From the sequence record ON529851.1: a DNA stretch of 64,000 bases. One strand, 5' to 3'. This document shows, piece by piece, positions 6,281-33,429 of the stretch. Position numbers and translations under genes: made by a program. Under the pieces are notes generated by a model. It saw nothing but the letters and a program-made list of their open reading frames with translations, was not told the origin of the DNA and ran no database searches. The number at the start of each line of letters is the position of its first letter. Position 1 is the stretch's first letter.

Positions 6281-6307
6281 TGTAAAGGAATGATCTGCGG
6301 AGATCAA
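6281..6307 (-). promoter_or_regulatory. promoter with TTCCTTTACA box (copy 1)
   Basis: TTGATC-N11-TTCCTTTACA upstream of the DUF262 gene. Confidence 0.7.
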
Positions 6308-6309
6308 GC

Positions 6310-6873
6310 CTAGTTCAGCACCTTCTCCACAAAAACTGCGAAGGCTTCATGCGCAGACGCGAAGTCGCGCGAGGTGAGGTCGTCGGACAGGTCCAGCCCC
6401 AGGCGATCGCCTTCCCACAGGATGCGCCAGGTGCCCGGCGTGGCGGTGCGCACGCCCTTCTCGTCCTCGGTGAACGCGGCGCGCAGCCGGGCGACCCGGC
6501 CCGACTTGACCCGATCATAGACGCCGGCGGTGTAATCAATGTCGTAGGCGTCGGCGTCGCGCTTGCGAATCGAGAGGGAGTCCAGGCGGGTCATGCGCGG
6601 CGCGGCCGGGCGGCTGATCTCGCCGTAGGGATTGTCGGTCTCGATGACGCGCACGCCGAAGGATTCCCAGCGCAGGGTGTGCGGCGCGTGGCGATCCGAC
6701 GAGGTCAGGGTGATGTGGACCGTCTTGTTCAGTTGCGATCGGTCCGTGTGAGGGTTCGCCATGATGTTGATCAGGGCCTGGTCGTCGACCGTCGCCGCCG
6801 TGGCGCTGTCATAACGCAGCATGTCCATGGGGAACTCGGCGCTGTAGCGCAGTTCAACCGTAAAGGTGTGCAT
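6310..6873 (-). CDS. hypothetical protein
   Basis: ATG 6873 with GAGGAGG RBS, downstream of box promoter. Confidence 0.7.
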   Translation of the reverse strand: MHTFTVELRYSAEFPMDMLRYDSATAATVDDQALINIMANPHTDRSQLNKTVHITLTSSDRHAPHTLRWESFGVRVIETDNPYGEISRPAAPRMTRLDSLSIRKRDADAYDIDYTAGVYDRVKSGRVARLRAAFTEDEKGVRTATPGTWRILWEGDRLGLDLSDDLTSRDFASAHEAFAVFVEKVLN

Positions 6874-6903
6874 GGGGTCCTCCTCTTGCGTCGTCCAGGC
6901 GGC

Positions 6904-6930
6904 TGTAAAGGAACCCAATGCGTCTGTCAA
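6904..6930 (-). promoter_or_regulatory. promoter with TTCCTTTACA box (copy 2)
   Basis: TTGACA-N11-TTCCTTTACA. Confidence 0.75.
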
Positions 6931-6942
6931 CGGACGCGGTCA

Positions 6943-7275
6943 TTATTTCCGGCGGCGGAACTCGCGCACCTGGACAGCCTTGGCCTCGAAATAGACGTCG
7001 GGTCCACCGGATTTCAACGGCTTTTCGACGAAGGTGCGGGTCTTGGTGTCCTGCATCAGGCGCAGGTGCCCGCTGCGGGTCAAGACGTCCAGGTGCCGCT
7101 CGGCGGCGCGGTCGCCTTCAAAGCGGTAGCGATCGTCGTAGTAGGTCTCTTCGCCGCCGCGTCGAGGTCGCGCCACGGGCTTGATGTGGTAGATCGCGGT
7201 GACGGCGAAGGTGTCGCCGACGGCAGGAGCGACCTTCTTCAGATAGGCGCGATTGGCGCGGGTCAGGAGGGTCAT
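6943..7275 (-). CDS. hypothetical protein
   Basis: 110 aa; ATGA overlap. Confidence 0.6.
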   Translation of the reverse strand: MTLLTRANRAYLKKVAPAVGDTFAVTAIYHIKPVARPRRGGEETYYDDRYRFEGDRAAERHLDVLTRSGHLRLMQDTKTRTFVEKPLKSGGPDVYFEAKAVQVREFRRRK

Positions 7276-7646
7276 GCGCTGCGCCCCTTCATCATAGAGG
7301 AGACCCAGCGTTTAAACACCATGAGATCACGATCAAGGCGCGGTTTGCGCCAGGGCGGCAGGGCGAGCGGCACCACCGAGGTGGGGTAACGCACGCCGGT
7401 GTAGAGTTTGTCCACGACTTCCTGCATCAGGCGCTTCATCTCAACATCGGAGATGCGCGAAACTTCTGCCCATGGAATTTCGCCGTAGGGGGTCACCACC
7501 TTGACGTCGCTGTAGTCACCCGTCTTGCTGGAGGGCGTAATGCCGGCGTGTAGGTCTTCCAGGAAAGTGTTGCGCACGCAGGTGTGCGCCAGGCAGATGG
7601 CCTGAAATTGTTCTGGGTTCAGCGTCTCCGGGTCGAGCGGTCTCAT
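7272..7646 (-). CDS. hypothetical protein
   Basis: ATG 7646 (MRPLDPE) with GGAGG RBS. Confidence 0.6.
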   Translation of the reverse strand: MRPLDPETLNPEQFQAICLAHTCVRNTFLEDLHAGITPSSKTGDYSDVKVVTPYGEIPWAEVSRISDVEMKRLMQEVVDKLYTGVRYPTSVVPLALPPWRKPRLDRDLMVFKRWVSSMMKGRSA

Positions 7647-7942
7647 GACACCTCCAGGGCTTTGACTTTTGTGACGACGCCGGGCGCCAGGACCATCAGG
7701 GCCTTGGCGCCGCACGGCAGGATGCCGGCCGGGTCATAGACGAACCGGCCGACGTAGACGCCGGTCTCGGTCCACAGTTCGATCTCGTGGCCGTACTCGG
7801 GGTCGATTGAGGACCGCCCGCGCGAAAGCTTCAGCGGCGGATCGTTCTTCTCGTGCTTGCGATTCGAATCGATCGTCCCCCGATTGACGTGGATCGTTCG
7901 GTCCTGGGGCGAGATCGGCGCGATGGCGCTCATCTTGGACAA
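7643..7942 (-). CDS. hypothetical protein
   Basis: 99 aa; coupled. Confidence 0.6.
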   Translation of the reverse strand: MSKMSAIAPISPQDRTIHVNRGTIDSNRKHEKNDPPLKLSRGRSSIDPEYGHEIELWTETGVYVGRFVYDPAGILPCGAKALMVLAPGVVTKVKALEVS

Positions 7943-7951
7943 GCGGAACTC

Positions 7952-8767
7952 CTAATACTTGATTTTCGAGCCGTCGTTGAGGGTGAAGGTGCGCTCGACC
8001 TTCGTGCCCAGTTGGACGTCATTGCGGGGACGATAGGGATGCTCGTAGGCGGCGCCGCCCGATTCCAGCAAGGGCAGTTCCCGCGCCGCGCGTCGCCCGT
8101 AGACGGCGGCGCACTTATCGCCGCAGAAATCCGCGTCGATGTAGGACTCTCCGTCCCAGGTCTCGAACCACTGGACATACCCCGCGCGTTTGCGATCGGT
8201 GTCGCCGTAGTCGTGGATCGCCACCACCCGGCGATTGGTCAGCCGCTGGCAGTCTTCCAGAGTGCGCGGATGGTTCGGCTCGATCGTGTGCTCGTAGCGA
8301 TGGTGATCCGTGCTCAACCGCAGGGGTTTGGCGCACTGCCGGCAGGTCTGAACCTCCCCGGTCAGGTCCGCCTCCCAGTTGATGGTGACTTTGGCGTAGG
8401 CCGCCTTGTGCATGGCGCGCGCCTTCATGCGCGTCGGCGGCAGGGGCTTACCACCGCCGTCGAGCAGCACCGTCAGGTTCTTGCGCCAGGCATGCGTCAA
8501 CGCCGCGCCGACGCCGACGCCATAGAGCGTGTCGACCTGGGCTTCAGCCGCTTCAAACTTGGCGATCGTCGGGCGCTCATAGAACAGCTTCTTCAAGCCA
8601 TGCCAGGAAGCGTGCTCGTCCCGGTTCCAGTAGTTGCAGCCCAGGCCGTTGAAGACCACCGCCGTGGGCGAGCGCATCATGATTCGCACGTCCGAACCCG
8701 GAAAGATCGAACCCGCCACCTGCGGGTGCGCCTTCTCGATGGGGACGAAGACAATCTCGGGCGTCAT
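7952..8767 (-). CDS. hypothetical protein with putative Zn-binding Cys pairs
   Basis: ATG 8767 (MTPEIVF); CRQC and CGDKC. Confidence 0.65.
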   Translation of the reverse strand: MTPEIVFVPIEKAHPQVAGSIFPGSDVRIMMRSPTAVVFNGLGCNYWNRDEHASWHGLKKLFYERPTIAKFEAAEAQVDTLYGVGVGAALTHAWRKNLTVLLDGGGKPLPPTRMKARAMHKAAYAKVTINWEADLTGEVQTCRQCAKPLRLSTDHHRYEHTIEPNHPRTLEDCQRLTNRRVVAIHDYGDTDRKRAGYVQWFETWDGESYIDADFCGDKCAAVYGRRAARELPLLESGGAAYEHPYRPRNDVQLGTKVERTFTLNDGSKIKY

Positions 8768-9018
8768 GCGCAGCGCACCATGCCGTGCGGGGTCTGGCCC
8801 CATTCCAGCCAGGCGATGACCACCGCCTCCTGCATGAGGGCGGGGTCGCTGACCTCGACCGAACGCACGCCGGCTTCGGTCATGAACAGCTTGGCGGTCG
8901 CCGCCCACGGGACCTGCGTCTGGGTGACAGGATTGAAGGCCCGCCCCTTGAAGGTCTGGATGCCGACCAGCTTGCGGGTCTTGGCGTCGCGGCGCCGGGC
9001 GAGGAAGGCGCGCAGCAT
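8764..9018 (-). CDS. hypothetical protein
   Basis: 84 aa; start overlaps upstream stop. Confidence 0.55.
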   Translation of the reverse strand: MLRAFLARRRDAKTRKLVGIQTFKGRAFNPVTQTQVPWAATAKLFMTEAGVRSVEVSDPALMQEAVVIAWLEWGQTPHGMVRCA

Positions 9019-9374
9019 CAGGCGGGCCACAGCGAGACCGAGCCCGGATCGCGCCAGGACACTTCATAGCCGTGCTGTTGCGCCCAGGCCTCGATCAGCG
9101 GGTGGACCCAGGGATCGAACGGGGCGAACTCGCCCTCGAACTGGCCCTGATAGTGGGCGAAACCGCGACCGTCTTCGGCCGAGACGATAATCTCGCGGAC
9201 GTCATCCTGGGAGGCGAAGGCCGTCGGATGTAGGTCGCGGGTCTCCCATTCGGCCAGGCCGTCGGCCCCGATCACCTCGTTGCCGTCGGCGTTGCGTTTC
9301 AACTTGTAGAACGGGTCCACCACCGTCAGCTTTTTGAGCGATTCGACGGCGTCGTCGCGGGTCTTGAACGGCAT
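9018..9374 (-). CDS. hypothetical protein
   Basis: ATG 9374 with AGGAGG RBS, downstream of box promoter. Confidence 0.7.
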   Translation of the reverse strand: MPFKTRDDAVESLKKLTVVDPFYKLKRNADGNEVIGADGLAEWETRDLHPTAFASQDDVREIIVSAEDGRGFAHYQGQFEGEFAPFDPWVHPLIEAWAQQHGYEVSWRDPGSVSLWPA

Positions 9375-9404
9375 GGGCTTCCTCCTGTTCGTCGTCGACC
9401 TGGA

Positions 9405-9431
9405 TGTAAAGGAACTGTCTGCGGGTGTCAA
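9405..9431 (-). promoter_or_regulatory. promoter with TTCCTTTACA box (copy 3)
   Basis: TTGACA-N11-TTCCTTTACA. Confidence 0.75.
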
Positions 9432-9496
9432 CGGGGTTGTCACTCGTGCGCTTCGCGCCCTCGTGCCCGGCTCCGCCGGCCCCACCTCCGGTCAGG

Positions 9497-10045
9497 CTAG
9501 GCGGCGAAGCGGTCGATCATCCAGTGCAGGTCCTGCGGCTCGAAGGCGTCGAACTCCTCGATCAGGTCGGCGGTCACGGGAAAGGCGATCACTTCAGCCG
9601 AGGCGGGCGGGACGACGCTGCGGCGGCTGTCGGCCACGGCGCCCTTGCCGCGTCCGATACTCTGGCGTGGCTTCGCACCGCGTTTCGGCTTGTAGGTCGC
9701 CTTGCGTCGCAGGGCGTTGCACTGTTTCGACGTCTCGGCGGCGTCGCCCCGTTTCAGCCCAAGCCGATCGAGCCGGCCCAGGATGGCGCTGCGGCTGCGG
9801 TTGCCCATGATCAGACTGATCTCCTGGGCCGTCTTGCCTTCGCGCCAGAGCCGGACCATGTCGTCGACCTCGGCCTGAGGCCAGGCGTGGGTCGGCTTTT
9901 TCGGCTGCGCCGCCCTGCGGGCCTGGACCTTGGCGATCCGGCGCAGTTCCGCCCGTTCCTGAGGATCGACCGGAACCTCCATGTCGTCCCAGTCGCCGGC
10001 GCCGCGCCAGTCGTGGTCCAGGGCGTCTTCCAGGGCCGCCGTCAT
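9497..10045 (-). CDS. gcrA: GcrA-like cell-cycle regulator
   Basis: WPQAEVDDMVRLWREGKTAQEISLIMGNRSRSAILGRLDRLGL matches the GcrA N-terminal HTH pattern (W..E....L..LW..G.S...I...LG..R.A.IG...RLGL). Confidence 0.7.
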   Translation of the reverse strand: MTAALEDALDHDWRGAGDWDDMEVPVDPQERAELRRIAKVQARRAAQPKKPTHAWPQAEVDDMVRLWREGKTAQEISLIMGNRSRSAILGRLDRLGLKRGDAAETSKQCNALRRKATYKPKRGAKPRQSIGRGKGAVADSRRSVVPPASAEVIAFPVTADLIEEFDAFEPQDLHWMIDRFAA

Positions 10046-10311
10046 GACGCCCGCCGGGTCAACATGCGCCGGGGGCGCAGATTTGACCGCCCCGTCCGGG
10101 GAGAGGGGACCAGGCTATAGCCCATCTGCTCGGCGAGCAGGGACGCCAACAGATGGGCCTCGACGCGGGTCATGGTCTGTTCGGTGGTCGAGTGGGGGCC
10201 GGTCAACACATAGGTGACGCCCTTGACGTCAGAGCCTTCCAGCAGGTGCTTGCGCACCTCCAGGCGGATTTTACGCCCGCGTTCGTTGATGAAGTTGACG
10301 TGGCGCTTCAT
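10042..10311 (-). CDS. hypothetical protein
   Basis: 89 aa; coupled. Confidence 0.55.
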   Translation of the reverse strand: MKRHVNFINERGRKIRLEVRKHLLEGSDVKGVTYVLTGPHSTTEQTMTRVEAHLLASLLAEQMGYSLVPSPRTGRSNLRPRRMLTRRAS

Positions 10312-10624
10312 GGTTCCTCACGACAATGAGCGCAAGGTCGCGCTCCATGTTGCAGATTTGGTGGGCGATCACGAAGTTCTCTTCGGAATCCGCGCCGCCG
10401 TCGGCGAACCGCACCACATGTTCATAAGTGGCGCCGTACCGACCGTAGTTCGGTCGCCCCTCCGGGTCCTCGTTCAGGCGCCCGCCGCAATGGCAACAGC
10501 GCCAGTTCTGGGCCTCGCTCAGACGATCCTTCAGGTCCCCGAAGAACTTGGTGTGGATGCGGATGCGGCGGCCGAGGTCGTCATGTTCAGGCTCTTCCGG
10601 CCGCCGCCATTTCCGTTTCTTCAC
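10271..10624 (-). CDS. HNH endonuclease
   Basis: CCHCGG..TYEHVVRFADGG..N..AHQICN; GTG start overlapping the SerRS stop. Confidence 0.75.
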   Translation of the reverse strand: MKKRKWRRPEEPEHDDLGRRIRIHTKFFGDLKDRLSEAQNWRCCHCGGRLNEDPEGRPNYGRYGATYEHVVRFADGGADSEENFVIAHQICNMERDLALIVVRNHEAPRQLHQRTRA

Positions 10625-11931
10625 TCCGCCAGACCGACGCTCGGCAGACGCGACCGCAGATAGGGGACCAGGATGGCCGGCATGTCGACGCCGCCGTCGT
10701 CGGTCTGATGGTTCTCGAACAGCGCCGCCAGGGTGCGCCCGACCGCCAGGCCGGAGCCGTTCAGGCTGTGCAGGTAGCCCAGCTTGCCGTCCGCCTGACG
10801 ATAGCGGCCCTTCATGCGCCGGGTCTGGAAGTCGCCGCACCAGGAGATCGAGGCGATCTCGATATAGCGCTGCTGGCTGGGCATCCAGACTTCCAGGTCG
10901 ATGGTCTTGCGGGCGGCGAAGCCCATGTCGCCGGCGGCCAGCAACACCTTGCGGTAGGGCAGGTCGAGGTATTGCAGGACCGTCTCGGCGCAGGCGACCT
11001 TGCGGGCGAACTCGGCCTCGGCCTGTTCAGGCTCGACCAGCGAGACCAATTCCACCTTGTGGAACTGGTGTTGCCGGATCAGGCCGGTGGTGTCGCGGCC
11101 GGCGGCCCCGGCTTCGGCGCGGAAGCAGGGCGTCAGGGCGGTGAAACGCAGCGGCAGGGCCTCGCGCTCGGTGGTCTGCTCGCGCACCAGATTGGTCAGC
11201 GGCACCTCGCCCGTGGGGATCAGCAGGTTGCCGTCCGTCAACTGGAAGAGGTCGTCCTTGAACTTCGGCCATTGCCCGGTGGCGTACATGACGTTCGGCT
11301 TGACGATGAACGGCACCGACTTCTCGACATAGCCGTGTCGGTGCACATGCAGGTCGAGCATGAACTGGCCCAGGGCGCGCTCGACGCTGGCGAAGGCGCC
11401 CGACAGGACGGCGTAGCGCGATCCGCTCAGCCAGCCGGCGACGGCGCTGTCATAGCTGTCCCCGGCCAGGGTGACATGGTCCTGGGGCTCGACGTAGGCG
11501 CGCCGCTGGCCCCATTCACTGAGAACGATGTTGTTCGCTTCTCCGCCCTCAGGGATGTCCTCGGCAGGCAGGTTCGGCAGTTGGTCCACCAGGCCCTCGC
11601 GGGCCTTGTATAGGGCGTCCTCCTGCTTCGCCAACCGCTCCAGTCGCGGCTTGATCTCGACCATGCGGGCGCGCAGGGTCTCTTCCTCGGTCGGCGGCGC
11701 ATCGTCTTCCCGCGCCGCCACCACGGGCCGATCGCCCCGGCGGAGTTCTCCGATCCGGGTCGAGATGGCGTTGCGTTCGGTCTGGAGCGCCTGGAGTTCG
11801 GTGCGGGTCGTCTGGAGGTCGCGGTGCGTCTCGCGGGCGTCGTCGACGATGGCCTTCACCGCCCCGCCGCGTTTGGCGATCGCCGCGACGACCACGTCCG
11901 GCTCATTGTCGATCAGATGGAAATCAAGCAT
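10621..11931 (-). CDS. serS: seryl-tRNA synthetase
   Basis: N-terminal coiled-coil arm, LIPTGEVPLTN, motif 2 FRAEAGAAGRDT.GLIRQHQFHKVE, motif 3 LNGSGLAVGRT. Confidence 0.92.
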   Translation of the reverse strand: MLDFHLIDNEPDVVVAAIAKRGGAVKAIVDDARETHRDLQTTRTELQALQTERNAISTRIGELRRGDRPVVAAREDDAPPTEEETLRARMVEIKPRLERLAKQEDALYKAREGLVDQLPNLPAEDIPEGGEANNIVLSEWGQRRAYVEPQDHVTLAGDSYDSAVAGWLSGSRYAVLSGAFASVERALGQFMLDLHVHRHGYVEKSVPFIVKPNVMYATGQWPKFKDDLFQLTDGNLLIPTGEVPLTNLVREQTTEREALPLRFTALTPCFRAEAGAAGRDTTGLIRQHQFHKVELVSLVEPEQAEAEFARKVACAETVLQYLDLPYRKVLLAAGDMGFAARKTIDLEVWMPSQQRYIEIASISWCGDFQTRRMKGRYRQADGKLGYLHSLNGSGLAVGRTLAALFENHQTDDGGVDMPAILVPYLRSRLPSVGLAE

Positions 11932-12490
11932 CGTCGTCCTCGTCGTCAGGGGCGTAGGTCGGCTCGATCTTCACGATCTCGCCCTGGGCGTCCAGCAGAT
12001 AGGCCTGCTGTCCGATGGCTGGAGCCGACTTGGCGAAGGCCTGCGCCTCTTCGAGGGTGTTGAACACGGCGCGCGTGAGGCGCCAGCCCCAGAAAATTTC
12101 ATCCAGTGACGGCGGGCTGCGGTCAGAGCACCGCAACCGGTAGGGCGTGTGAAGGTGCGCCTTCATCAAGCCCCATTGGCCGGTCTCTTGGTCCTGCACC
12201 ACACGCCACGGCACGGGAGGCCCCTGCTCGCGCAGCGCCGCCTCCCGCTGATCCGAAGCGGCTTCGTATTCGTCCCAGCGGCGATCGTCGATCTTGCGCC
12301 GTTCCTGATCACGGCGGTGGCCTTCCGACCTGCGCAGGTCTTGCTCGGCAGCGGCTTCGCGACGCTCGGCCTCGACCTGGGAATCATGGGCGGCCCAGGC
12401 GTCGCGCTTGTGGTTGCGCCAGACGATCACGCCGAGCAGCACGAAGATGGCGGTGACGCCGGCGGCGATCACCAGCAGTTGATCCTGCAT
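11924..12490 (-). CDS. membrane-anchored hypothetical protein
   Basis: N-terminal hydrophobic helix followed by a charged helical region. Confidence 0.65.
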   Translation of the reverse strand: MQDQLLVIAAGVTAIFVLLGVIVWRNHKRDAWAAHDSQVEAERREAAAEQDLRRSEGHRRDQERRKIDDRRWDEYEAASDQREAALREQGPPVPWRVVQDQETGQWGLMKAHLHTPYRLRCSDRSPPSLDEIFWGWRLTRAVFNTLEEAQAFAKSAPAIGQQAYLLDAQGEIVKIEPTYAPDDEDDDA

Positions 12491-13631: not shown

Positions 13632-13657
13632 GGAAACCCCGATGTCAGTTTTCGCGA

Positions 13658-13691
13658 CACTAGCTGCCGCGATCACTGGCTGTCAACGCTC
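13658..13691 (-). promoter_or_regulatory. sigma70-like promoter (GAGCG-TTGACA class)
   Basis: GAGCG TTGACA-17 nt-CTAGTG. Confidence 0.55.
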
Positions 13692-25695: not shown

Positions 25696-25728
25696 GAAAA
25701 AGGCCGCCTCCCTTGCAGGAGGCGACCT
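25696..25728 (-). terminator. intrinsic terminator overlapping a promoter and RBS
   Basis: AGGTCGCCTCC-TGCAAG-GGAGGCGGCCT-TTTT directly before ATG 25695. Confidence 0.65.
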
Positions 25729-25760
25729 CTATCAAGTAGCATTGACGTCTGTCAACGCTC
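25727..25760 (-). promoter_or_regulatory. sigma70-like promoter (GAGCG-TTGACA class)
   Basis: GAGCG TTGACA-17/18 nt-(A)TAGAG. Confidence 0.5.
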
Positions 25761-25773
25761 TAACGCACAACCC

Positions 25774-26013: not shown

Positions 26014-26036
26014 GGTGTGGTCCTTACGTCTAGGGG

Positions 26037-27287
26037 TTAGGCCGAGACCTGCTCCTCGGAGAGGCTCAGCAACCTGTTTTGGACCTCGGCGGGCGAAAGA
26101 GGCAACTCGCTTTCGATGCCGCTCACGAAGGTGTGAGCGCAGCCTTCGGGGTAGAAGGTCTCATACATCGTCGTCACTTCCTCGACGCCGATGTGTCCCA
26201 ACACGTAGCGACGGTCGATGCGGCCGGGCCGCATCAGGGCGGCGTCCAGGGTGTCGGCGTGGTTGGAGGTGATGAAGAGGATGCGGCCGTCGCGCGCACC
26301 GATGCCGTCGATGGCGTTCAGGATTCCCGACAGCGTGATTCCGCTCTTGGCCGCCTCTCCGCCGCTGTTCACCTGGATCGCCGCGTCGTCGCCGGCCGAC
26401 TGGCTGGCGGACCGCTCCCCAGCGGCCTTGACGGCGTCGAAGTCCTCGACGACCACGAAGTTCGATCCCGCCTGGTTGATTGCACGCTGTAGCTGGTTGT
26501 CGTTGTCCAAAGTCGCCGGGTTGATGATGAAGACGGGTTTGGAGAAATAGGAGGCCAGGGCGAAGATAAAGGTGGTCTTGCCGGTGCCGGGCGGACCCTC
26601 GAACGAAAATCCTCGCCGATAGGGAATGCCGCGCAAGGCGTACCACATGCGCCGCGCCAGGAACCGCGCGATGTCGGCGATGACGGCGGCCTTGATTCCG
26701 GCGTCCAGATAGACGGTGTCCATCGACCGCTTGGGCCGGCGCTCGATCAGGCTGTAGTCGTGCCCGGCCCACAGGTAGACCGGGATCGTGTTCTTGTCCT
26801 CTTCGACGGACTTGATTGATTCGAGCAGCAGGCGCAGTACGTCGTGATTGCGGCCGGGCGTGGTGATGGTGATCGACTGCTTGCGGCGCTTGGCGGCGGA
26901 GTAGGCGTCGGCCTCGTCGCCCTTGTCTTCGATGTGGCGGTGTACGAACCAGAACCGCATGCCGTTGCGCAGCAGGTGGAACCCGGCGCCCGGCGACAGG
27001 TTGAAGTCTTCCTTGTCGTTCGCCCGATCATACCAGGCCGCCACGCCGAACCGGCGAGAATGCTTGGCGTCGGGGTGCTTGGACAGCCACAGGTCGACGA
27101 AACGGAAGACGGTGTCTTCGGAGTAGACCGTCAGCGTGGTGGTGAACTGGGCCTTGATGAAGCCCAGAAGCTTCAGCGGCACCGACTTGGCCTGCATCAG
27201 GACCCAGCCGGTGATCGCCAGGGTCAATCCGCCGCCCACCAGCGGATTGCTGCTCAAAAACGTCGTGACAGACTCGAACATGGGCAC
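26037..27287 (-). CDS. Bcs1-like AAA+ ATPase
   Basis: N-terminal TM helix, BCS1_N-like middle region, RPKRSMDTVYL..WY..RGIPYRRG..F.GPPGTGKT, VVVEDFD, ITLSGILNAIDG, TSNH..LDAALMRPGRID. Confidence 0.85.
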   Translation of the reverse strand: MPMFESVTTFLSSNPLVGGGLTLAITGWVLMQAKSVPLKLLGFIKAQFTTTLTVYSEDTVFRFVDLWLSKHPDAKHSRRFGVAAWYDRANDKEDFNLSPGAGFHLLRNGMRFWFVHRHIEDKGDEADAYSAAKRRKQSITITTPGRNHDVLRLLLESIKSVEEDKNTIPVYLWAGHDYSLIERRPKRSMDTVYLDAGIKAAVIADIARFLARRMWYALRGIPYRRGFSFEGPPGTGKTTFIFALASYFSKPVFIINPATLDNDNQLQRAINQAGSNFVVVEDFDAVKAAGERSASQSAGDDAAIQVNSGGEAAKSGITLSGILNAIDGIGARDGRILFITSNHADTLDAALMRPGRIDRRYVLGHIGVEEVTTMYETFYPEGCAHTFVSGIESELPLSPAEVQNRLLSLSEEQVSA

Positions 27288-27314
27288 TCGGGGAAGATGG
27301 AGGATCGACCGCGA

Positions 27315-27343
27315 GTGTTAATGTGGCTGACACAGAGTGTCAA
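27315..27343 (-). promoter_or_regulatory. sigma70-like promoter of the Bcs1-like gene
   Basis: TTGACA-17 nt-TAACAC. Confidence 0.6.
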
Positions 27344-27346
27344 GTT

Positions 27347-27826
27347 TTACGGCACTTCTTCCGTCTTGTTGATGCCCCAGCGTTCGATGCGCGAGTTCAG
27401 GCCTGACACGGTCAGCCCCAGGCTTTTCGCCGCCTCCTTCTTGGTCGGCGCGGCGTCCAGGGCCGCCACCGTCGCCGCATAGAGGCGTTCGTCGCGGTCG
27501 CTCCGGGTCAGGGTGTCGGCGATCCCGTAGCGGCGCAGCCGCGAGTTCAGGCCGGACACGGTCAGTTTCAGCGCGCGCGCCGCCTCGACGCGGGTCTTGG
27601 CGCTCGCCATCGCCGCCTCGGTCTTCGCGATCATGGCCTGCTGATCGGGCGTGGGTTCGAAGGTCTGAGGCGGTCCGGCATGCGACAGGTCCGGCGCCCG
27701 TTCGGCGATGATCTGACTGACCCGCATGCGCGAGATGCCGAAATGGCGCGCAGCGTCCGCCGGGATGAACCCCTGGCGGACATAGGCGACGACGGCGTCG
27801 CTGTCGACGGTGGAAGGACGGGCCAT
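27347..27826 (-). CDS. multi-HTH protein with tandem Fis-like HTH repeats
   Basis: EAARALKLTVSGLNSRLRRYGI and EAAKSLGLTVSGLNSRIERWGI, plus an N-terminal HTH (DAARHFGISRMRVSQI). Confidence 0.7.
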   Translation of the reverse strand: MARPSTVDSDAVVAYVRQGFIPADAARHFGISRMRVSQIIAERAPDLSHAGPPQTFEPTPDQQAMIAKTEAAMASAKTRVEAARALKLTVSGLNSRLRRYGIADTLTRSDRDERLYAATVAALDAAPTKKEAAKSLGLTVSGLNSRIERWGINKTEEVP

Positions 27827-27827
27827 A

Positions 27828-28169
27828 TCAGGTCTCCTGGAGCAGTCGGCGGGCGTAGGCGCGCGCGTCTTCGTTAGTCGCCGGCAAGCCGGCGTATTCT
27901 TCGGCCGTGATCGGCGCGATAGTGACGATGGAATCGGCGAGCCCCGCCATGGTCTTCGGGGTCCATTCACGGTAGAGCCCGTCGGGGCTGTTCGCGATGG
28001 GCTGGTAGCGCTCGCTCGGCCGGGCGTCGATCGAGGCGAAGCCGGCCTTGGTCACGCTGGTCACCTGGGCGCGACGGACCAGCATGACCTTGCCGCGATT
28101 GCCGCCCCAGGCCCTGACCGAGGTCAGCTTGACGAAATCACCCTTCTTCAGCATGGGCACGTCCATCAC
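27828..28169 (-). CDS. hypothetical protein
   Basis: 113 aa; coupled. Confidence 0.55.
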   Translation of the reverse strand: MMDVPMLKKGDFVKLTSVRAWGGNRGKVMLVRRAQVTSVTKAGFASIDARPSERYQPIANSPDGLYREWTPKTMAGLADSIVTIAPITAEEYAGLPATNEDARAYARRLLQET

Positions 28170-29587
28170 AGGAGGCTCCCCGGCTCGATCTCGTCGTAGA
28201 CGGCGCGGGTCAGCACGGTTTCAGGTTTGCCGTCCATCTTGGACTGGCTGTGTTTCTTGATCGTCGCCTTGATCCGGTAACGCTTGCCGGCCTGCGGGCG
28301 TTGCTCGCCGGTGGCGAAATGGACGCAGCGGCTGCCGTCGTCGCCCAGGATCGCCACGACGGTCTTGGGGCCGAACTGGCTCGGGATCACCGTGCAGCGC
28401 TCGATCAGGCCGGTGAAGACGTAGCGGCCGCCTTCGTCGCCCTTCAGATGCTTCGGCTCGGGTCGGGCCTGGGCGACCGATGCGTCCTTCACGCGTTGCA
28501 GCGAGCGCCCGACGAACATGGCGACGCCGGCCAGGATGATGTTGTAGCGCTTGTTGCGGGCGTATTCGCACGACAGGGCGATGCGCAGGTTCTCGCCGAA
28601 GTCGCCTGTGGCCTTCTCGACATAGTCGACGAGCGCCATCAGATCGAGCGGTTCCTTCAGCGGGTGGGCCTTGTGCCAGTCGCGTGCTTCCTTGAAGCGG
28701 CGATCGTAGCGTGGGTTCATGTCGATCGCGCCGCGCAGGGCGTGCACGTCGTCGCGCAGGGCGTCGCGGATGTCGCGCCCATAGCCGCCGTAGCGGACCG
28801 CCGCCTGATAGACGTCGCGGACCAGGCCTTCGACCCAGAAATGGGTGGCGTGGGCGCCGCTCCAGGCGTCGCTGTCGTCGCGGTCGCCCACGATGGACGA
28901 GCGCACGGCTTCGCGCGCCAGGATGTCGTTGGCCTCCAGGCCGAGGAAGTCGCGCGAGCATTGACGCCCGATCACCAGACGGCGGCCGTCGGCGGTCTCC
29001 ACCAGGAAGGAAGCGCGGCGATCGCGTTTGTGCCCGCAGTGGTCGCAGTCGCGCCAGCGCGGCAGATAGGGCTCCAGTTCAGCCGGGTCAGCGCCGTTGA
29101 GCGCGTGGCGATAGACCTGGACGTTGTCCTCGGCCATCTCGAAGGCGCCGATCAGGCGCGCGTTCTCGCCGGCGACGGCGGGCGCCTCAATGGTGACCAG
29201 GACCTGGCGGATCATCAGCGGGCGACCCAGGCGATCGCGCCGGAAGCGGTTTTCGACAAAGACCTCTTCGGTCTTGATGATCTCGACGGACTGGTGGAAG
29301 CGCTTCATGCGCTTGTCCAGCTTGGCGACGGCCTTGACCACGTCGGCTTCGGCGCCGTCGTCGCAGGTCAGGACAAACCGCTGGCGGCCGCCCGGTGCGC
29401 CTTCGACCTGGGAGACGCGGTGGTGCCGCTGGGGTTCCGGCGGGTTTTCGCGGCGTTCCGCCTCGATCCACGCCTCGACGTAGTCCGGATCGTCGAACGG
29501 GTCGGCGCCGGCGGACTCGAACGCGGCCGCGACGGTCTCGCCCTCGCGGTGATCCAGTTCGGCTCTCCAGTCTTCGGCGTCGTACAT
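28166..29587 (-). CDS. hypothetical protein with CxxC..C motif and C-terminal OB-fold-like domain
   Basis: CDHCGHKRDR..IGRQC; C-terminal beta-rich region SQFG..Y.IKATIKKH..ETVLTR; ATG 29587 with GAGGAGG RBS. Confidence 0.7.
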   Translation of the reverse strand: MYDAEDWRAELDHREGETVAAAFESAGADPFDDPDYVEAWIEAERRENPPEPQRHHRVSQVEGAPGGRQRFVLTCDDGAEADVVKAVAKLDKRMKRFHQSVEIIKTEEVFVENRFRRDRLGRPLMIRQVLVTIEAPAVAGENARLIGAFEMAEDNVQVYRHALNGADPAELEPYLPRWRDCDHCGHKRDRRASFLVETADGRRLVIGRQCSRDFLGLEANDILAREAVRSSIVGDRDDSDAWSGAHATHFWVEGLVRDVYQAAVRYGGYGRDIRDALRDDVHALRGAIDMNPRYDRRFKEARDWHKAHPLKEPLDLMALVDYVEKATGDFGENLRIALSCEYARNKRYNIILAGVAMFVGRSLQRVKDASVAQARPEPKHLKGDEGGRYVFTGLIERCTVIPSQFGPKTVVAILGDDGSRCVHFATGEQRPQAGKRYRIKATIKKHSQSKMDGKPETVLTRAVYDEIEPGSLL

Positions 29588-29614
29588 AGCGTCCTCCTCG
29601 TGTCTGGGGAGGCT

Positions 29615-29641
29615 TGTAAAGGAACTAAATGCGGAAGTCAA
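29615..29641 (-). promoter_or_regulatory. promoter with TTCCTTTACA box (copy 9)
   Basis: TTGACT-N11-TTCCTTTACA. Confidence 0.75.
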
Positions 29642-29643
29642 CA

Positions 29644-30390
29644 CTAGCGGAGCACGCGATCCGCATAGAGGCATTTGGCGTTGAACAGAGCCGCCGGCGC
29701 ACGAAGGGCCGAACCGCCGCGACTGTCGAAAACGAGCAGACCTGCGGACGGGTCTTCGCCGACGGCGCTGTAAAAACCGTAGCCGCAGGCCACGAAGTCG
29801 ACCCCGTCCACCGCCACCAGGAACAACCGTGCGAACTCGACTTGACGCCCTGTGGCCCGCGTCACCGCCCTCGACACCTGTTCGATCCGGGCTTCATTGG
29901 GCAAGGTTGACAGCGGCCCCCAGGAGAGGCGCTGGCGCTCCGCGCCTTCATTTCTATAGAGCGTGGTGATTCGGGGGTTGGTCATCGAGGCGCCCCAACC
30001 ACCGACATCGGGAGGCAGGGCGAACCAGGACGTCTCCGGCCCGCGCCCGACCTGGCGCAAGGCGATGCGCACCTTTTCGTCGAGGCGGCAGGCGCGAGCG
30101 AGGTCGTGATCCACGAAGCCGCATCCCGCCTGTTGGTCCTGAATCCGATGGATGACCGCAGCTTCTTCGCCGGGAAGCCATCCGCGCACCACGGGAGGAA
30201 TGTCCATCAGCCGCTCGATCATCAGATGGGCGGGTTCCAGCAGATAGGCGCGCACATCGGGATCGGCGCGGCAGGCCTCGGCCAGCGCCGCTTCGGCGTA
30301 GTCGCAGGTTTCAGGGTCGCCGGCGCGGGCGGTGTTCGGCGTCAGGCTGAACAACACGCAGGCGGCGCCCCAGGCGGCGAAGACACGCAT
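29644..30390 (-). CDS. putative secreted/periplasmic protein
   Basis: ATG 30390; N-terminal signal peptide ending ..TARA. Confidence 0.55.
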   Translation of the reverse strand: MRVFAAWGAACVLFSLTPNTARAGDPETCDYAEAALAEACRADPDVRAYLLEPAHLMIERLMDIPPVVRGWLPGEEAAVIHRIQDQQAGCGFVDHDLARACRLDEKVRIALRQVGRGPETSWFALPPDVGGWGASMTNPRITTLYRNEGAERQRLSWGPLSTLPNEARIEQVSRAVTRATGRQVEFARLFLVAVDGVDFVACGYGFYSAVGEDPSAGLLVFDSRGGSALRAPAALFNAKCLYADRVLR

Positions 30391-30401
30391 CTCTGTTCTC
30401 C

Positions 30402-30629
30402 CTAAAGCCGAGTATGCTCGACGTCGCCGTTGGCGTGGAAGGTCCAGGCGTTCAGACCGCACCAGTCCGGATCGTCTTCTTCCCGCTTCTGGTGCTCCAC
30501 GGTGATTTCGGGCGCGCAGTTCACCGGCAGCTTGCGCTTGGCGTAAGCGAAGGCCAGCCCCTTGCGACGAAAGGGGTGGTCGGTGTACCGCCCTTCCTCA
30601 GGGCAGACGGTGACGACGAAACGCTCCAT
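30402..30629 (-). CDS. hypothetical protein
   Basis: 75 aa; coupled. Confidence 0.55.
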   Translation of the reverse strand: MERFVVTVCPEEGRYTDHPFRRKGLAFAYAKRKLPVNCAPEITVEHQKREEDDPDWCGLNAWTFHANGDVEHTRL

Positions 30630-31189
30630 CAGGCCGGCACCAGCCCCCGGAAGGTCAGGGAGATGCGCGCGCCGACAGGCTCATCCTCCATCTTGGGGAT
30701 GGCGTGGAGGTGCGATTGCTGCATGCCGGGACGCATCATCAGCAGCGACCCCGGCTCCAGCAGCATCCGCTCGGGATGGGCGCCCTTTTGATTGCGCTTG
30801 AAGGCGATGTCGCGCCCCGCGCCCAGGGTGATCACGGCGATCGGTCGGTTATGGTCGATCTGCGCGTCGTCGTCGGCGTGCCATCCCAGGCTGTCGGACC
30901 CGTCGTGATAGAGGTTCAGGAAGCAGCCCTCCAGACGCACGCCGGCCTCGGCCTCGATCTGGTCGCGGCAGATGTCGATGAAGGGGTGGGAGGGCCGAGG
31001 CAGGTAGGTCCGCTCGCCGGCGCCGACGCCATAGGTGTAGGGGCGATCGAAGGTGTTGGTCCAGTATTCCGAACGCGGCGCCGTCTCCCGACGCTCCCAT
31101 GCCAGGCCGTCGCGCAGCATGAGGAAGCCCGCTTCCTGCATGTCGGCGGCAATGAAATCATCGAAATACACCACGGGGGCGTCGGACAT
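30629..31189 (-). CDS. AlkB-like 2OG-Fe(II) oxygenase
   Basis: LNLYHDG.DSLGWHADD (HxD), LHAIPK (H), RISLTFR; ATG 31189 with AAGGAGG RBS. Confidence 0.88.
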   Translation of the reverse strand: MSDAPVVYFDDFIAADMQEAGFLMLRDGLAWERRETAPRSEYWTNTFDRPYTYGVGAGERTYLPRPSHPFIDICRDQIEAEAGVRLEGCFLNLYHDGSDSLGWHADDDAQIDHNRPIAVITLGAGRDIAFKRNQKGAHPERMLLEPGSLLMMRPGMQQSHLHAIPKMEDEPVGARISLTFRGLVPA

Positions 31190-31219
31190 GGGGACCTCCT
31201 TATGCAACTGAGACGAGTG

Positions 31220-31253
31220 TCGTAGCGGGAGCGAGTGCTGTTTGTCAACACTC
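31220..31253 (-). promoter_or_regulatory. sigma70-like promoter (GAGTG-TTGACA class)
   Basis: GAGTG TTGACA-17 nt-CTACGA. Confidence 0.55.
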
Positions 31254-31273
31254 GCGCGCCAGAGGGAAACTAC

Positions 31274-32326
31274 TTAGTCGGGCGCGTCACTGTCTTTAAC
31301 GACGTCAGACCGGGGAGGGTTCAACGCCAACAGGACGGTTTTACCGACGCTCAAGGGATCGACGCCGGCCGCCAGGGCGTCGTGCAGCCGCGAGCCCAGG
31401 GCGCGCTCGCCCAGACGTTGCATGGCGAAGTCGACATGGGCGTCGATCTCGCTCTTGGCGTTCTCGCTCATCTCGGTGATCGCTTCGTGGGCCTGCTCGG
31501 CCACATAGGGCATGTTGGCGGTGAAGTCGCGCTCGGCCTGGGCCAGCGTCGCCAGAACGTCGTTGAGATCGCCCTTGCGGACCGACCCGCCCGCCAGCAA
31601 GGCCTCCAGCGCCTTTCGGGCCTGGGACAGCCCTTCGGCGGCCGAAGACGCCTTCTTGGAGATGGCCTCGCGGAAGGTTTCTTCGTCATGTTTGTGTCGC
31701 CCAGGATCGCGCGGCGTCAGGTAGTCGCCGGTCTGGGGATCACGGTAGCGTCGCAGGGTGCAGGGCACGCCGCCCGTGTTGAACGACGACAGCAGGCGCG
31801 CCCACTGGACTTCGCTCATTTCAACGCGAGCGACCGAACGGTTCTCGTGGACGCGATCTCCAGCGTCGCGTTTGACCAGTTGGGCCGTGCTGATTTCCAG
31901 GATGATGGCGTGCCCCTGGGGGTAGTCGACCATGAACAGGTCTGACTCGCCCGACACTCGCGCCACGGTCACCATGCCGAACGACGGATGCTCGACCTCA
32001 TGGCCGTGCAGGTCCCGGTCGCGCACGTCGACCGCGATGATCCGGGCGGGGTCGTCGATTTCGTCCCAACGCGACAGCAGGCTGCCGCTGTTGTTGCGGG
32101 CGACGAACACCACGCGCGGCTCGGCGAGCATGACCGCGTTGAGTTTGTCGTTCCCCGAGATGCCGCCGTAATGCTGGAAGTCGTGCGGCTTGATCCCCAT
32201 CAGGGCGCAGGCCTCCTTCTGGGTCGAGGCCGCGACGTAGCAGTGCGCCTGGTTGTGGTGCGGCGACACCGCCTTCAGGCGCGGATCGGTCTTCATGTAC
32301 CAGTAGACGTGCAGGCGTTCAGTCAT
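31274..32326 (-). CDS. hypothetical protein
   Basis: 350 aa; GGAGG RBS, downstream of box promoter. Confidence 0.75.
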   Translation of the reverse strand: MTERLHVYWYMKTDPRLKAVSPHHNQAHCYVAASTQKEACALMGIKPHDFQHYGGISGNDKLNAVMLAEPRVVFVARNNSGSLLSRWDEIDDPARIIAVDVRDRDLHGHEVEHPSFGMVTVARVSGESDLFMVDYPQGHAIILEISTAQLVKRDAGDRVHENRSVARVEMSEVQWARLLSSFNTGGVPCTLRRYRDPQTGDYLTPRDPGRHKHDEETFREAISKKASSAAEGLSQARKALEALLAGGSVRKGDLNDVLATLAQAERDFTANMPYVAEQAHEAITEMSENAKSEIDAHVDFAMQRLGERALGSRLHDALAAGVDPLSVGKTVLLALNPPRSDVVKDSDAPD

Positions 32327-32357
32327 GGGTCCTCCGGGGAGCGTCGTCAGGATTTTC

Positions 32358-32384
32358 TGTAAAGGAATGATTTGCCGAGGTCAA
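32358..32384 (-). promoter_or_regulatory. promoter with TTCCTTTACA box (copy 10)
   Basis: TTGACC-N11-TTCCTTTACA. Confidence 0.75.
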
Positions 32385-33370
32385 GCGCCCAGTTTGACCC
32401 AGGCGGCGTCGCGACGTTCGTGGGTCTGGACCCAACCGTCGTAACGGGGCTGGTGGTAGGCGATTTCGCCCGCCAGGGTTTCGATTTCATGGCGAATGTT
32501 GCGCAGCTTGGCGGCTTTGAGGCGGTCGTAGGTCACCTCGGGATGCTGGGCGCGGCGGATCGCCTTGGTCGCCTCGAAGACGGCCTCGAAGGTCTCGCGG
32601 GTCACCATATGCCGGGCGGTCTGGGCCTTGGACCAGGCGTTGGGCCGCGTCGTCTCATCCGCGAAGGCCCAAGTCAGCGCATGGGTTTCGGCTTCGGTGT
32701 CGATCAGCGCCTTTTCGGCGACGACCTTGCTCGTCCGCAGCATCTTCAGCATGGCGCCGAGACGTTCGCGCGAGACTTCCCACGGCAGCGACTTCGCCCC
32801 GTAGCAGGAGGCCGTCTGCCAGCCTGAGCCCGGCCGCTGATAGCCGTGGTGGGCGATCTCGCCCGTCTCCGCCAGAATACGGCGCTGGCAGCACTGGCAG
32901 GTCATCGCCTTGGCGTCGCGTTCTTCACGGGCGATCGAGGTTTTCGAGGGGCGCGGCGCCCGCTTGCCGATCAGGGGCTTGAGGGCGTCGAGCGCCTGAG
33001 CCAGGGGCAGCATTTCCTCCAGCAAGGCGACCATGGCGTCGCGCATGGCGCTTTCGCCCTTGAAGGCCTTCGCCTTCTTCAGATAACCCGCCACCAGATG
33101 CGGATAGGGATGGCCCAGGCTCCAGGCCAGGTCCTGCTCCTTCTCGGAGAGGGTCGACATCGCCCCGTTCCAGCGGAACCCGTCGCCGATCACCTTTTTC
33201 CAGGCGGCGTCGATGGCGTTGGAGATGTGGTATTTGACGTCGGCGAATTCCGCCTTGATCAGGACGCCTTCCGCCTGGAAGCCGGCGATCTTGCCCAGAG
33301 CGCCTTCGAGGTTCTGGGCGTAGCGGTCCGAGATATTAGCGAACATCGTGGGGAAATCGGTCGGCGTCAT
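32381..33370 (-). CDS. hypothetical protein with CxxC..H..C motif
   Basis: ATG 33370 with GGAG RBS; CQCC..HHG..C. Confidence 0.7.
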   Translation of the reverse strand: MTPTDFPTMFANISDRYAQNLEGALGKIAGFQAEGVLIKAEFADVKYHISNAIDAAWKKVIGDGFRWNGAMSTLSEKEQDLAWSLGHPYPHLVAGYLKKAKAFKGESAMRDAMVALLEEMLPLAQALDALKPLIGKRAPRPSKTSIAREERDAKAMTCQCCQRRILAETGEIAHHGYQRPGSGWQTASCYGAKSLPWEVSRERLGAMLKMLRTSKVVAEKALIDTEAETHALTWAFADETTRPNAWSKAQTARHMVTRETFEAVFEATKAIRRAQHPEVTYDRLKAAKLRNIRHEIETLAGEIAYHQPRYDGWVQTHERRDAAWVKLGA

Positions 33371-33402
33371 GCGGGGTCTCCGTCCTGAAAGGGTGAGGAG
33401 GC

Positions 33403-33429
33403 TGTAAAGGAACGAATTGAGGATGTCAA
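33403..33429 (-). promoter_or_regulatory. promoter with TTCCTTTACA box (copy 11)
   Basis: TTGACA-N11-TTCCTTTACA. Confidence 0.75.

What the first reader, a model, noticed from the sequence alone, without database searches (positions are those of the whole stretch)
6281..33429. Phage regulon marked by an 11-copy TTCCTTTACA box built into promoters
Seen: the exact 10-mer TTCCTTTACA occurs in intergenic gaps at 6281, 6904, 9405, 18136, 18905, 19394 (inverted), 20135, 22058, 29615, 32358 and 33403. In nine copies it lies exactly 11 nt after a TTG-initiated -35 hexamer (TTGACA in five), so its TACA begins the -10 position of a 17-nt-spacer promoter. An AT-rich exact 10-mer repeated at fixed spacing in GC-rich DNA is not expected by chance. 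I saw no copy in the plus-strand arm. The genes it drives are almost all orphans (DUF262, the 708-aa protein, the OB-fold/Zn protein and others). Inference: a co-regulated set of early host-takeover or anti-defence genes, read either by host sigma70 with an extended element or by a phage regulator. Candidate regulators in the window are the XRE, tandem Fis-HTH and GcrA-like proteins.
Basis: partly seen in the sequence, partly recalled or inferred. Interest (0 to 1): 0.78.

Follow-up and report, generated by a model that had tools for sequence, protein, structure and literature searches.

The report
Conserved promoter box in jumbo phage
The repeated 10-base box is the core of about 34 near-identical promoters that head the operons of one 113-kb arm of accessory genes in a Brevundimonas jumbo phage; the promoter class is real, shared with related phages and undescribed, but of a familiar kind.

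Summary
The window is Brevundimonas phage vB_BpoS-Marchewka (record 186001-250000). TTCCTTTACA occurs 11 times (0.01 expected), always in intergenic gaps that make up 4% of the arm. Nine copies lie exactly 11 nt after a TTG hexamer.

Genome-wide there are 33 direct sites and one inverted site. All lie in the leftward arm, record 106.9-219.4 kb. The motif spans 29 nt: the -35, a semi-conserved spacer and the box. An ATG follows 27-33 nt later.

The box is unchanged in 8 of 8 orthologous promoters of phage Kabachok, while the spacer drifts. It recurs as TTYCTTTACA at orthologous sites in the distant phage Gurke and in Caulobacter phage CcrColossus. It is absent from phiCbK, which infects the same host as CcrColossus. 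It is therefore a phage-lineage trait, not a host requirement.

Generic TTGACA-N17-TA promoters without the box sit in the same arm. Best reading: host RpoD-type promoters with an invariant class-specific extension at -18 to -13, each coupled to a leader hairpin that can hide the ribosome-binding site in read-through transcripts. Timing and any box-reading factor are untested. The XRE and GcrA-like candidates do not fit the distribution of the box.

The parts
6248..6307 (-). Box promoter of MARCHEWKA_03790 (GmrSD_N/DUF262 protein). -35 TTGATC at 6302-6307, box at 6281-6290, ATG at 6248-6250.
6871..6930 (-). Box promoter of 03800. -35 TTGACA at 6925-6930, box at 6904-6913, ATG at 6871-6873.
   Evidence: an orthologous box promoter exists in Gurke
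9372..9431 (-). Box promoter of 03860, just downstream of the GcrA-like gene. -35 TTGACA at 9426-9431, box at 9405-9414.
18103..18162 (-). Box promoter of the operon 03990 (708 aa) plus 03980 (XRE, TgrL homolog). -35 TTGACA at 18157-18162 overlaps the stop codon of the upstream gene. Box at 18136-18145.
   Evidence: orthologous promoter in Gurke at 93375
18869..18931 (-). Box promoter of 04010. -35 TTGCAT at 18926-18931, box at 18905-18914.
19352..19411 (-). Promoter of 04020 with the box inverted inside the spacer. On the minus strand it reads -35 TTGACT (19406-19411), 17 nt holding the reverse complement of the box (19394-19403), then TAAGGC (19383-19388), GACGAC, SD, ATG.
   Evidence: conserved in Kabachok and at the orthologous place in Gurke
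20082..20161 (-). Box upstream of 04040 without a recognisable -35 (CGTTTC) and with a longer leader (50 nt). Box at 20135-20144.
22028..22084 (-). Box promoter of 04080. -35 TTGACA at 22079-22084 overlaps the upstream stop codon. Box at 22058-22067.
29585..29641 (-). Box promoter of 04200 (473 aa, phiCbK gp186 homolog). -35 TTGACT at 29636-29641, box at 29615-29624.
32324..32384 (-). Box promoter of 04240 (phiCbK gp236 homolog). -35 TTGACC at 32379-32384 overlaps the upstream stop codon. Box at 32358-32367.
33368..33429 (-). First box promoter of the leftward arm, serving 04250 (phiCbK gp233 homolog). -35 TTGACA at 33424-33429, box at 33403-33412.
33457..33485 (+). Neighbour, not a member. 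This is the box-less TTGACA-N17-TATAAG promoter that heads the rightward arm, back to back with the 33403 promoter.
1266..31273 (-). Context, not members. Six gaps of the same arm hold generic TTGAC(A/G)-N17/18-TA promoters without the box: 1266-1387, 18411-18490, 24531-24598, 25696-25773, 27282-27346 and 31190-31273.

Best explanation
The boxes are the cores of a promoter family read by the host's main (RpoD, sigma-70-type) RNA polymerase. Region 4 of sigma binds the TTGACA-like -35. Seventeen bases on, the TACA of the box supplies the T-A-n-A core of the -10. Transcription should then start about 7 nt further on, in or next to the conserved GACGAC, giving a leader of about 20 nt with a strong GGAGGA ribosome-binding site.

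The six invariant bases in front of TACA (TTCCTT, positions -18 to -13) are not needed for a polymerase of this type in this phage. I read them as a class-specific determinant that sets these 34 promoters apart from the generic promoters in the same arm. It is most likely read by a factor that the Colossus/Marchewka/Gurke lineage of phages brings along, either an activator riding on the polymerase or a shut-off repressor. Less likely, it is an unusually strict contact of the polymerase itself.

The C-rich bases between the -10 and the start point are complementary to the ribosome-binding site. Transcripts that read through from upstream can therefore fold a hairpin that hides the site, while transcripts that start at the box promoter lack the 5' arm. 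Each downstream gene would then be translated mainly when its own box promoter fires.

Shown here: the sequence architecture, genomic distribution, conservation and complementarity. Inferred: the start points, the polymerase, the extra factor, the timing and the translational gating.
For: Architecture:
- The logo of 24 exact sites shows the -35, a spacer C-K-C-A-r-A-t-C-R and the box.
- Hexamer spacing is 17 nt, and the distance from box end to ATG is 27-33 nt in 9 of 10 direct window copies.
- The Caulobacter RpoD consensus printed in PMC8144410 (TTGaCgS and GCtANAWC) fits the -35 and the T-A-n-A.

Class specificity:
- There are 33 direct sites and 1 inverted site, all in record 106.9-219.4 kb. 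Of 5 shuffles, 4 gave no site at the same score and one gave 2.
- Six generic box-less promoters sit in the same arm, and others elsewhere in the genome.
- In phiCbK, TTGACA-N17-TA promoters have no spacer conservation and there is no box.

Selection:
- The box is unchanged at 8 of 8 Kabachok orthologs, while the 11-nt spacer changed at about 12 of 77 positions (my count from the alignments).
- The flanks of paralogous copies are unrelated.
- The same box, TTYCTTTACA, sits at orthologous positions in Gurke and in CcrColossus.
- The -35 varies among sites, but the box hardly does.

Lineage, not host: CcrColossus and phiCbK both infect C. crescentus. Only CcrColossus has the box.

Orientation-free recognition: an inverted box inside the spacer of an otherwise generic promoter is conserved in Marchewka, Kabachok and Gurke.

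Hairpin:
- The SD pairs with the first 12 nt after the box in 42 of 53 sites.
- Site-matched duplexes average -7.95 kcal/mol against -6.75 for mismatched site pairs, permutation p = 2e-4.
- T4 genes e, soc, 49 and I-TevI are the precedent (PMC3014915).

Timing hint: the XRE behind the 18136 promoter is a homolog of phiCbK TgrL, an early gene (PMC10688885).
Against: - There are no transcript data for this phage or for any box-bearing relative. Start points and timing are inferred from geometry alone.
- An E. coli-type scan does not call these sites, because the last -10 position is never T.
- No box-reading protein was identified. Every annotated DNA-binding candidate has a homolog in box-less phiCbK.
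- Strong phage early promoters read by unmodified host polymerase can also be conserved far beyond the hexamers, so a factor is not required.
- The head-of-arm promoter at 33403 is a box promoter. If a phage factor were essential, that factor would have to be made from elsewhere first.
- Many Marchewka leader hairpins are weak (-2 to -10 kcal/mol; mean z only -0.3 against mononucleotide shuffles).
Confidence: 0.55

Rival explanations
1. These are plain strong promoters for unmodified host RpoD polymerase (an immediate-early class). The whole box is an optimised -10 plus extended -10 for Caulobacterales polymerase, and no phage factor reads it.
For: - The -35 and the 17-nt spacing are canonical, and the T-A-n-A fits the host consensus.
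- The first promoter of the arm is of this type.
- A TgrL homolog lies in the arm, and TgrL is early in phiCbK.
- T4 early promoters are described as exceptionally strong (PMC3014915).
Against: - phiCbK, on the same host as CcrColossus, does without the box.
- Generic promoters coexist in the same arm.
- The box is far less variable than the -35, which is unusual for polymerase contacts.
- A conserved inverted copy cannot serve as a -10.
Confidence: 0.3
2. The similarity reflects spread of a mobile or recombining promoter-leader cassette (duplication, gene conversion, shuffling of orphan genes between cassettes), not a shared regulatory input.
For: - The cassette is compact, about 55-60 nt from stop codon to ATG, with a near-constant box-to-ATG distance.
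- It flanks small orphan genes.
- The Marchewka-clade spacer is more alike than the Colossus spacer.
- Intergenic repeats that carry promoters are known in other viruses (PMC8707807, listed).
Against: - Similarity stops at the motif edges.
- Promoters sit at orthologous positions in clades whose DNA no longer aligns.
- Within orthologs the spacer drifts while the box does not. That is purifying selection on the box, not recent copying.
Confidence: 0.08
3. The box acts at the RNA level in polycistronic read-through transcripts, as a processing site or as part of an intercistronic structure. The promoter-like look would then be secondary.
For: - No terminators beyond chance lie in the arm, so the boxes are transcribed from upstream.
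- The pyrimidine-rich box and the C-rich tract can pair with the SD.
Against: - The fixed 11-nt distance to a TTGACA hexamer is a DNA-level promoter feature, seen in 9 of 11 window copies and in most of the 33 direct sites genome-wide.
- The head-of-arm copy has no upstream transcript on its strand.
- No Rfam family matches.
- The inverted copy would be the wrong strand for an RNA signal.
Confidence: 0.05
4. The copies are a chance repeat or an annotation artefact.
For: none
Against: - 11 copies were observed against 0.01 expected.
- All lie in the 4% of the arm that is intergenic.
- The box is conserved across three phage lineages.
Confidence: 0.01

Closest known systems
Caulobacter RpoD (sigma-73) promoters, consensus TTGaCgS / GCtANAWC as printed in PMC8144410
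   Same: The -35 hexamer, the spacing, and the T-A-n-A core with C favoured at the last -10 position.
   Different: The two bases before T-A are TT, not GC. Six further upstream bases are invariant, and the 5' half of the spacer is semi-conserved. None of this is seen in phiCbK promoters.
Phage T4 early promoters (many copies, very strong, read by host polymerase; PMC3014915)
   Same: Dozens of near-identical host-type promoters scattered through long co-oriented regions of small, mostly unknown genes.
   Different: The sequence and the place of the extra conservation differ. Early timing and strength are not shown here. Box and generic promoters are intermixed here.
T4 middle promoters with MotA/AsiA (sigma appropriation); comparison from established knowledge
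   Same: A phage-specific box of 9-10 bp in a fixed register, combined with one host sigma-70 element. The record annotates a 'motA' gene at 252421-253029.
   Different: Here the -35 is intact and the box overlaps the -10 instead of replacing the -35. The 'motA' protein has no Pfam match and no match to any solved structure sequence, and it has a homolog in box-less phiCbK.
T4 genes e, soc, 49 and I-TevI: the ribosome-binding site is hidden in read-through transcripts and free in transcripts from the proximal promoter (PMC3014915)
   Same: The DNA under and just after the proximal promoter encodes the 5' strand of a hairpin that pairs with the SD.
   Different: In T4 this concerns a few late-promoter genes. 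Here it would apply to tens of promoters of one class. It is predicted only, and many stems are short.
phiCbK class motif GTCGTGAATCTTGACA, found here
   Same: In the same phage subfamily, a TTGACA -35 is joined to an invariant class-specific element in about 19 copies.
   Different: That element lies upstream of the -35, holds a GANTC site, and marks the structural and replication modules. The box lies downstream of the -35 and marks the accessory arm.

Membership tests
RpoD / sigma-70-type promoter | -35 hexamer close to TTGACA | tested here: met
   Among the 33 direct sites, TTGACA occurs in 21 and a TTGAC-type hexamer in most others. Nine of 11 window copies have it.
RpoD / sigma-70-type promoter | 16-18 nt between the hexamers | tested here: met
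   17 nt in nine window copies. The same register holds in Gurke and Colossus.
RpoD / sigma-70-type promoter | -10 element | tested here: inconclusive
   T-A-n-A fits the Caulobacter consensus GCtANAWC. An E. coli-type -10 is not met: T at the last position occurs in 0 of 24 sites, and the consensus scan calls none of the sites.
RpoD / sigma-70-type promoter | Transcription start 5-9 nt after the -10 | not testable with these tools
   No transcript data were found for Marchewka, Gurke or Colossus; the genome paper has no promoter analysis.
Phage early promoter class | Active in the first minutes of infection, with unmodified host polymerase | not testable with these tools
   Only indirect evidence exists: a TgrL homolog lies in the arm, and tgrL is early in phiCbK. 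The per-gene phiCbK table was cut off in the held copy.
T4 MotA/AsiA middle promoters | Box replaces the -35 element | tested here: not met
   The -35 is present and the box lies at -18 to -9.
T4 MotA/AsiA middle promoters | MotA-family activator encoded | tested here: not met
   The protein annotated 'motA' has 0 Pfam families and no relevant solved-structure sequence match (best E 1.9, an unrelated plant protein).
GcrA / CcrM methylation-dependent promoters | GANTC site in the promoter | tested here: not met
   GANTC occurs in 2 of 33 sites.
GcrA / CcrM methylation-dependent promoters | Box co-occurs with a phage GcrA homolog | tested here: not met
   phiCbK has a GcrA homolog but no box. 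Colossus is reported to lack a GcrA homolog (PMC3556154) but has the box.
CtrA-controlled phage promoters (TTAA-N7-TTAA, PMC9437464) | Full CtrA site at the promoter | tested here: not met
   The window holds one such site, at 53319, far from any box.
Promoter-gated translation of the T4 e / soc / I-TevI type | Hairpin pairs the SD with a 5' strand that lies under or just after the proximal promoter | tested here: met
   The pairing partner lies within 12 nt after the box in 42 of 53 sites. The matched-versus-mismatched test gives p = 2e-4.
Promoter-gated translation of the T4 e / soc / I-TevI type | Read-through transcripts poorly translated, proximal transcripts well translated | not testable with these tools
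   This needs expression data.
Known RNA families | Rfam match at gathering score | tested here: not met
   0 matches in window 1-34000.

The most novel reading that the evidence does not exclude
A so far unidentified protein of the Colossus/Marchewka/Gurke lineage reads the 10-bp box next to a normally bound host sigma-70. This would be a way of re-targeting host polymerase that keeps the -35 contact and adds specificity at -18 to -13. It would work in either orientation (the conserved inverted copy) and switch about 34 operons at once. The leader hairpins would make translation of each operon's first gene depend on that switch. That would be a regulon-scale coupling of promoter choice and translation, and a mode of polymerase re-targeting unlike MotA/AsiA or phage sigma factors.
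Probability: 0.3. Interest if true: 0.72.

Novelty: new member of a known kind. Interest (0 to 1): 0.5.

Why it matters
phiCbK-like jumbo phages are not reported to encode an RNA polymerase of their own (PMC3556154), so they must steer the host enzyme. How they do this is unknown. This promoter class gives a precise, testable handle:
- about 34 sites in Marchewka, with more in Gurke and in CcrColossus;
- a box that selection holds fixed across genus-level divergence and two host genera;
- a natural control set of box-less promoters in the same arm;
- a natural orientation variant.

CcrColossus grows on the model organism C. crescentus, so the question can be addressed with existing tools. The promoters also define the operon structure of more than 100 kb of unannotated genes. 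If they prove strong, they would be compact promoter-leader units for Caulobacterales.

Tried and rejected
- **Host use of the box.** No Brevundimonas record appeared among the rows shown, so it says nothing either way.
- **IMG/VR scans.** The strict pattern gave 0 hits.
- **phiCbK per-gene timing.** The phage sheets of S3 Table are beyond the stored cut. Only tgrL and the module-level statements in the main text are usable.
- **'motA' lead.** Rejected.
- **GcrA lead.** Rejected on GANTC content and on phyletic pattern.
- **XRE/TgrL lead.** Not excluded, but unsupported, because homologs exist in box-less phiCbK.
- **CtrA.** No sites at the boxes.
- **E. coli-type promoter scan.** It misses all boxes by construction, and terminators are not enriched.
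- **Literature.** No paper in the library holds the box in a phage context. The genome paper has no promoter analysis. The T4 genome review could not be fetched by the id I tried.
- **Not attempted.** A full phyletic profile to nominate a box-specific factor would have needed about ten more 50-kb fetches and more family searches than the caps allow.

Full report
**Identity of the window.** The window is 100% identical to Brevundimonas phage vB_BpoS-Marchewka, ON529851.1. This is a 348,421-bp jumbo siphovirus of the Dolichocephalovirinae, with host B. pondensis LVF1. Window position 1 is record position 186001. Positions 1-33,450 are the upstream end of a long leftward (minus-strand) arm. A rightward arm starts at 33,547. 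The paper that described the phage has no promoter analysis.

- TTCCTTTACA occurs 11 times at the stated coordinates, ten on the minus strand and one (19394) on the plus strand. Dinucleotide-preserving shuffles give 0.01.
- All copies lie in annotated gaps upstream of minus-strand genes. The gaps total 1369 nt, 4.1% of the arm.
- Nine copies lie exactly 11 nt after a TTG-initiated hexamer, which is TTGACA in five. TACA therefore sits where a 17-nt-spacer promoter has the first four bases of its -10.
- The exceptions are 19394 (inverted) and 20135 (no -35).
- The distance from the box to the ATG is 27-33 nt in nine of the ten direct copies.
- At 18157, 22079 and 32379, and at the inverted copy, the -35 hexamer overlaps the TGA stop codon of the upstream gene. 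The cassette fills the gap from stop codon to start codon.

**The element is larger and more numerous than reported.**
- I fetched the whole genome. It holds 26 exact copies, 24 of them on the minus strand between record 106,901 and 219,403.
- An iterated weight matrix adds nine one-mismatch variants. This gives 33 direct sites plus the inverted one, all in that 113-kb arm. Of five shuffled genomes, four gave no site at that score and one gave 2.
- The logo spans 29 nt: G-n-TTGACA-nn-C-K-C-A-r-A-t-C-R-TTCCTTTACA. A C-rich tract follows, then GACGAC, GGAGGA and ATG.
- Sequence outside the motif is unrelated between copies, so these are not recent duplications.

**Selection acts on the box.**
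- In phage Kabachok (88% identical overall), all eight orthologous promoters keep the box unchanged. The 11-nt spacer changed at about 12 of 77 positions, by my count from the alignments.
- Phage Gurke aligns with Marchewka only in scattered coding stretches. It still carries TTGAC-N12-TT(C/T)CTTTACA at orthologous positions, for example before the orthologs of the 708-aa gene and of 03800. That is at least 19 sites in 80 kb.
- A loose scan of IMG/VR turned up Caulobacter phage CcrColossus (L164). Its accessory arm has at least ten sites of the form GCTTGAC(G/A)-N11-TTTCTTTACA, then GACGATCA, SD and ATG. One of them precedes its DUF262 gene, as in Marchewka.
- In Colossus the 5' half of the spacer is not conserved. 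The shared core is therefore the -35, the box and the GACGA tract.
- Within Marchewka the -35 varies (TTGACA, TTGACT, TTGACG, TTGATC, TTGCAT and others), while the box has only four spellings.

**The box is not a host requirement.**
- phiCbK infects C. crescentus, as CcrColossus does, and has no box at all. Its 71 TTGACA sites show T-A enrichment 17 nt downstream and no spacer conservation.
- Inside Marchewka, six other gaps of the same arm hold generic TTGAC(A/G)-N17/18-TA promoters.
- The rightward arm begins with TTGACA-N17-TATAAG.
- The Caulobacter RpoD consensus printed in PMC8144410 explains the -35 and the T-A-n-A of the box. It does not explain the invariant TTCCTT in front of it.
- An E. 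coli-type scan calls none of the sites, because the last -10 position is never T.

**The inverted copy.**
- At window 19394 the box is reversed. It lies inside the 17-nt spacer of an otherwise generic minus-strand promoter: TTGACT, spacer, TAAGGC, GACGAC, SD, ATG.
- The same arrangement is kept in Kabachok and at the orthologous place in Gurke.
- A reversed box cannot act as a -10. This is the best hint that something other than sigma reads the box. A plus-strand promoter is not excluded.

**Leader hairpin.**
- The C-rich bases right after the box are complementary to the ribosome-binding site.
- In 42 of 53 sites from the three phages, the predicted partner of the SD lies within the first 12 nt after the box, with GACGA in the loop.
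- Pairing is site-specific. Matched segments average -7.95 kcal/mol against -6.75 for segments taken from different sites, permutation p = 2e-4. The difference is significant in each phage separately.
- By standard geometry the start point falls at the 3' end of the 5' arm. Transcripts from the box promoter would lack that arm, and read-through transcripts would have it.
- This is the arrangement known for T4 genes e, soc, 49 and I-TevI (PMC3014915).
- Many Marchewka stems are short, so I treat this as a supported tendency with an inferred function.

**Timing and regulators.**
- No terminators beyond chance occur in the arm. The boxes are therefore internal promoters of a long co-directional region.
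- The XRE gene 03980 lies in the operon of the 18136 promoter. It is a homolog of phiCbK gp216, which is TgrL, an early and highly expressed gene in phiCbK. This is the only, and indirect, evidence for early timing. The per-gene phiCbK table was not available.
- XRE candidate: homologs exist in box-less phiCbK.
- GcrA-like candidate: confirmed as having a GcrA-type domain. But phiCbK has one, and Colossus is reported to lack one. GANTC occurs in only 2 of 33 sites.
- The annotated 'motA' gene just outside the window is unsupported and also has a phiCbK homolog.
- No reader of the box can be named.

**Verdict.**
- That these are real promoters of the RpoD type: about 0.85-0.9.
- That they form a distinct class: about 0.7.
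- That a lineage-specific factor reads the box: about 0.45. The alternative, polymerase alone, is about 0.35.
- That the class is early or delayed-early: about 0.5.
- That hairpin gating of translation operates: about 0.4.

The finding is a new member of a known kind, phage class-specific promoters. It is well anchored by comparative evidence and has two unusual features worth testing.

Noticed in passing
Marchewka record 51-95 kb (outside the window; L003); one copy at window 53330, with a TTAA-N7-TTAA site at 53319: A second, more abundant motif class. About 54 copies of a 12-mer holding TTAACCTTAA, and about 20 copies of CTCTTGTTAACTTC, lie in the region of widely spaced small genes. Related strings occur in the phiCbK terminal repeat, where CtrA sites were tested by others (PMC9437464). 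The window copy lies upstream of the flotillin gene.
   Followed up: partly
phiCbK JX100813.1, 19-115 kb and 200 kb (L009-L013): About 19 copies of GTCGTGAATCTTGACA, a GANTC methylation site abutting a -35 hexamer, lie upstream of structural, lysis and replication genes. This is a candidate middle/late, possibly GcrA/CcrM-linked, promoter class. One orthologous copy exists in Marchewka at record 29791.
   Followed up: partly
window about 1268-1321, minus strand (gap 1266-1387): An unannotated 17-codon hydrophobic mini-ORF with its own GACGAC, GGAGGA and ATG lies behind a generic TTGACG-N17-TAGGGG promoter.
   Followed up: no
window 25696-25773, minus strand: A generic promoter is followed by a G+C-rich hairpin and a T run just before the ATG of 04150. 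The SD lies inside the stem, which looks like an attenuator.
   Followed up: no
Marchewka record 53395, plus strand (outside the window): A stray exact copy of the box sits in the loop of a 10-bp hairpin followed by a T run. It is opposite in orientation to the local genes.
   Followed up: no
Marchewka record 252421-253029 (2.4 kb beyond the window end): The deposited annotation 'middle transcription regulatory protein motA' has no support from Pfam or from sequences of solved structures. The protein is a homolog of phiCbK gp148.
   Followed up: yes
window 19531-19595, minus strand: A 9-bp G+C hairpin without a clear T run lies between 04040 and the dubious 40-codon CDS 04030. It is a possible weak terminator or processing site, just upstream of the inverted-box promoter.
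   Followed up: no
Marchewka record 6839 and 7893, minus strand (tRNA region, outside the window): Two TTGACA promoters have box-like but degenerate -10 regions (TTCCTGTAGA, TTCTGTTACA) next to tRNA genes. They may be relatives of the box class.
   Followed up: no
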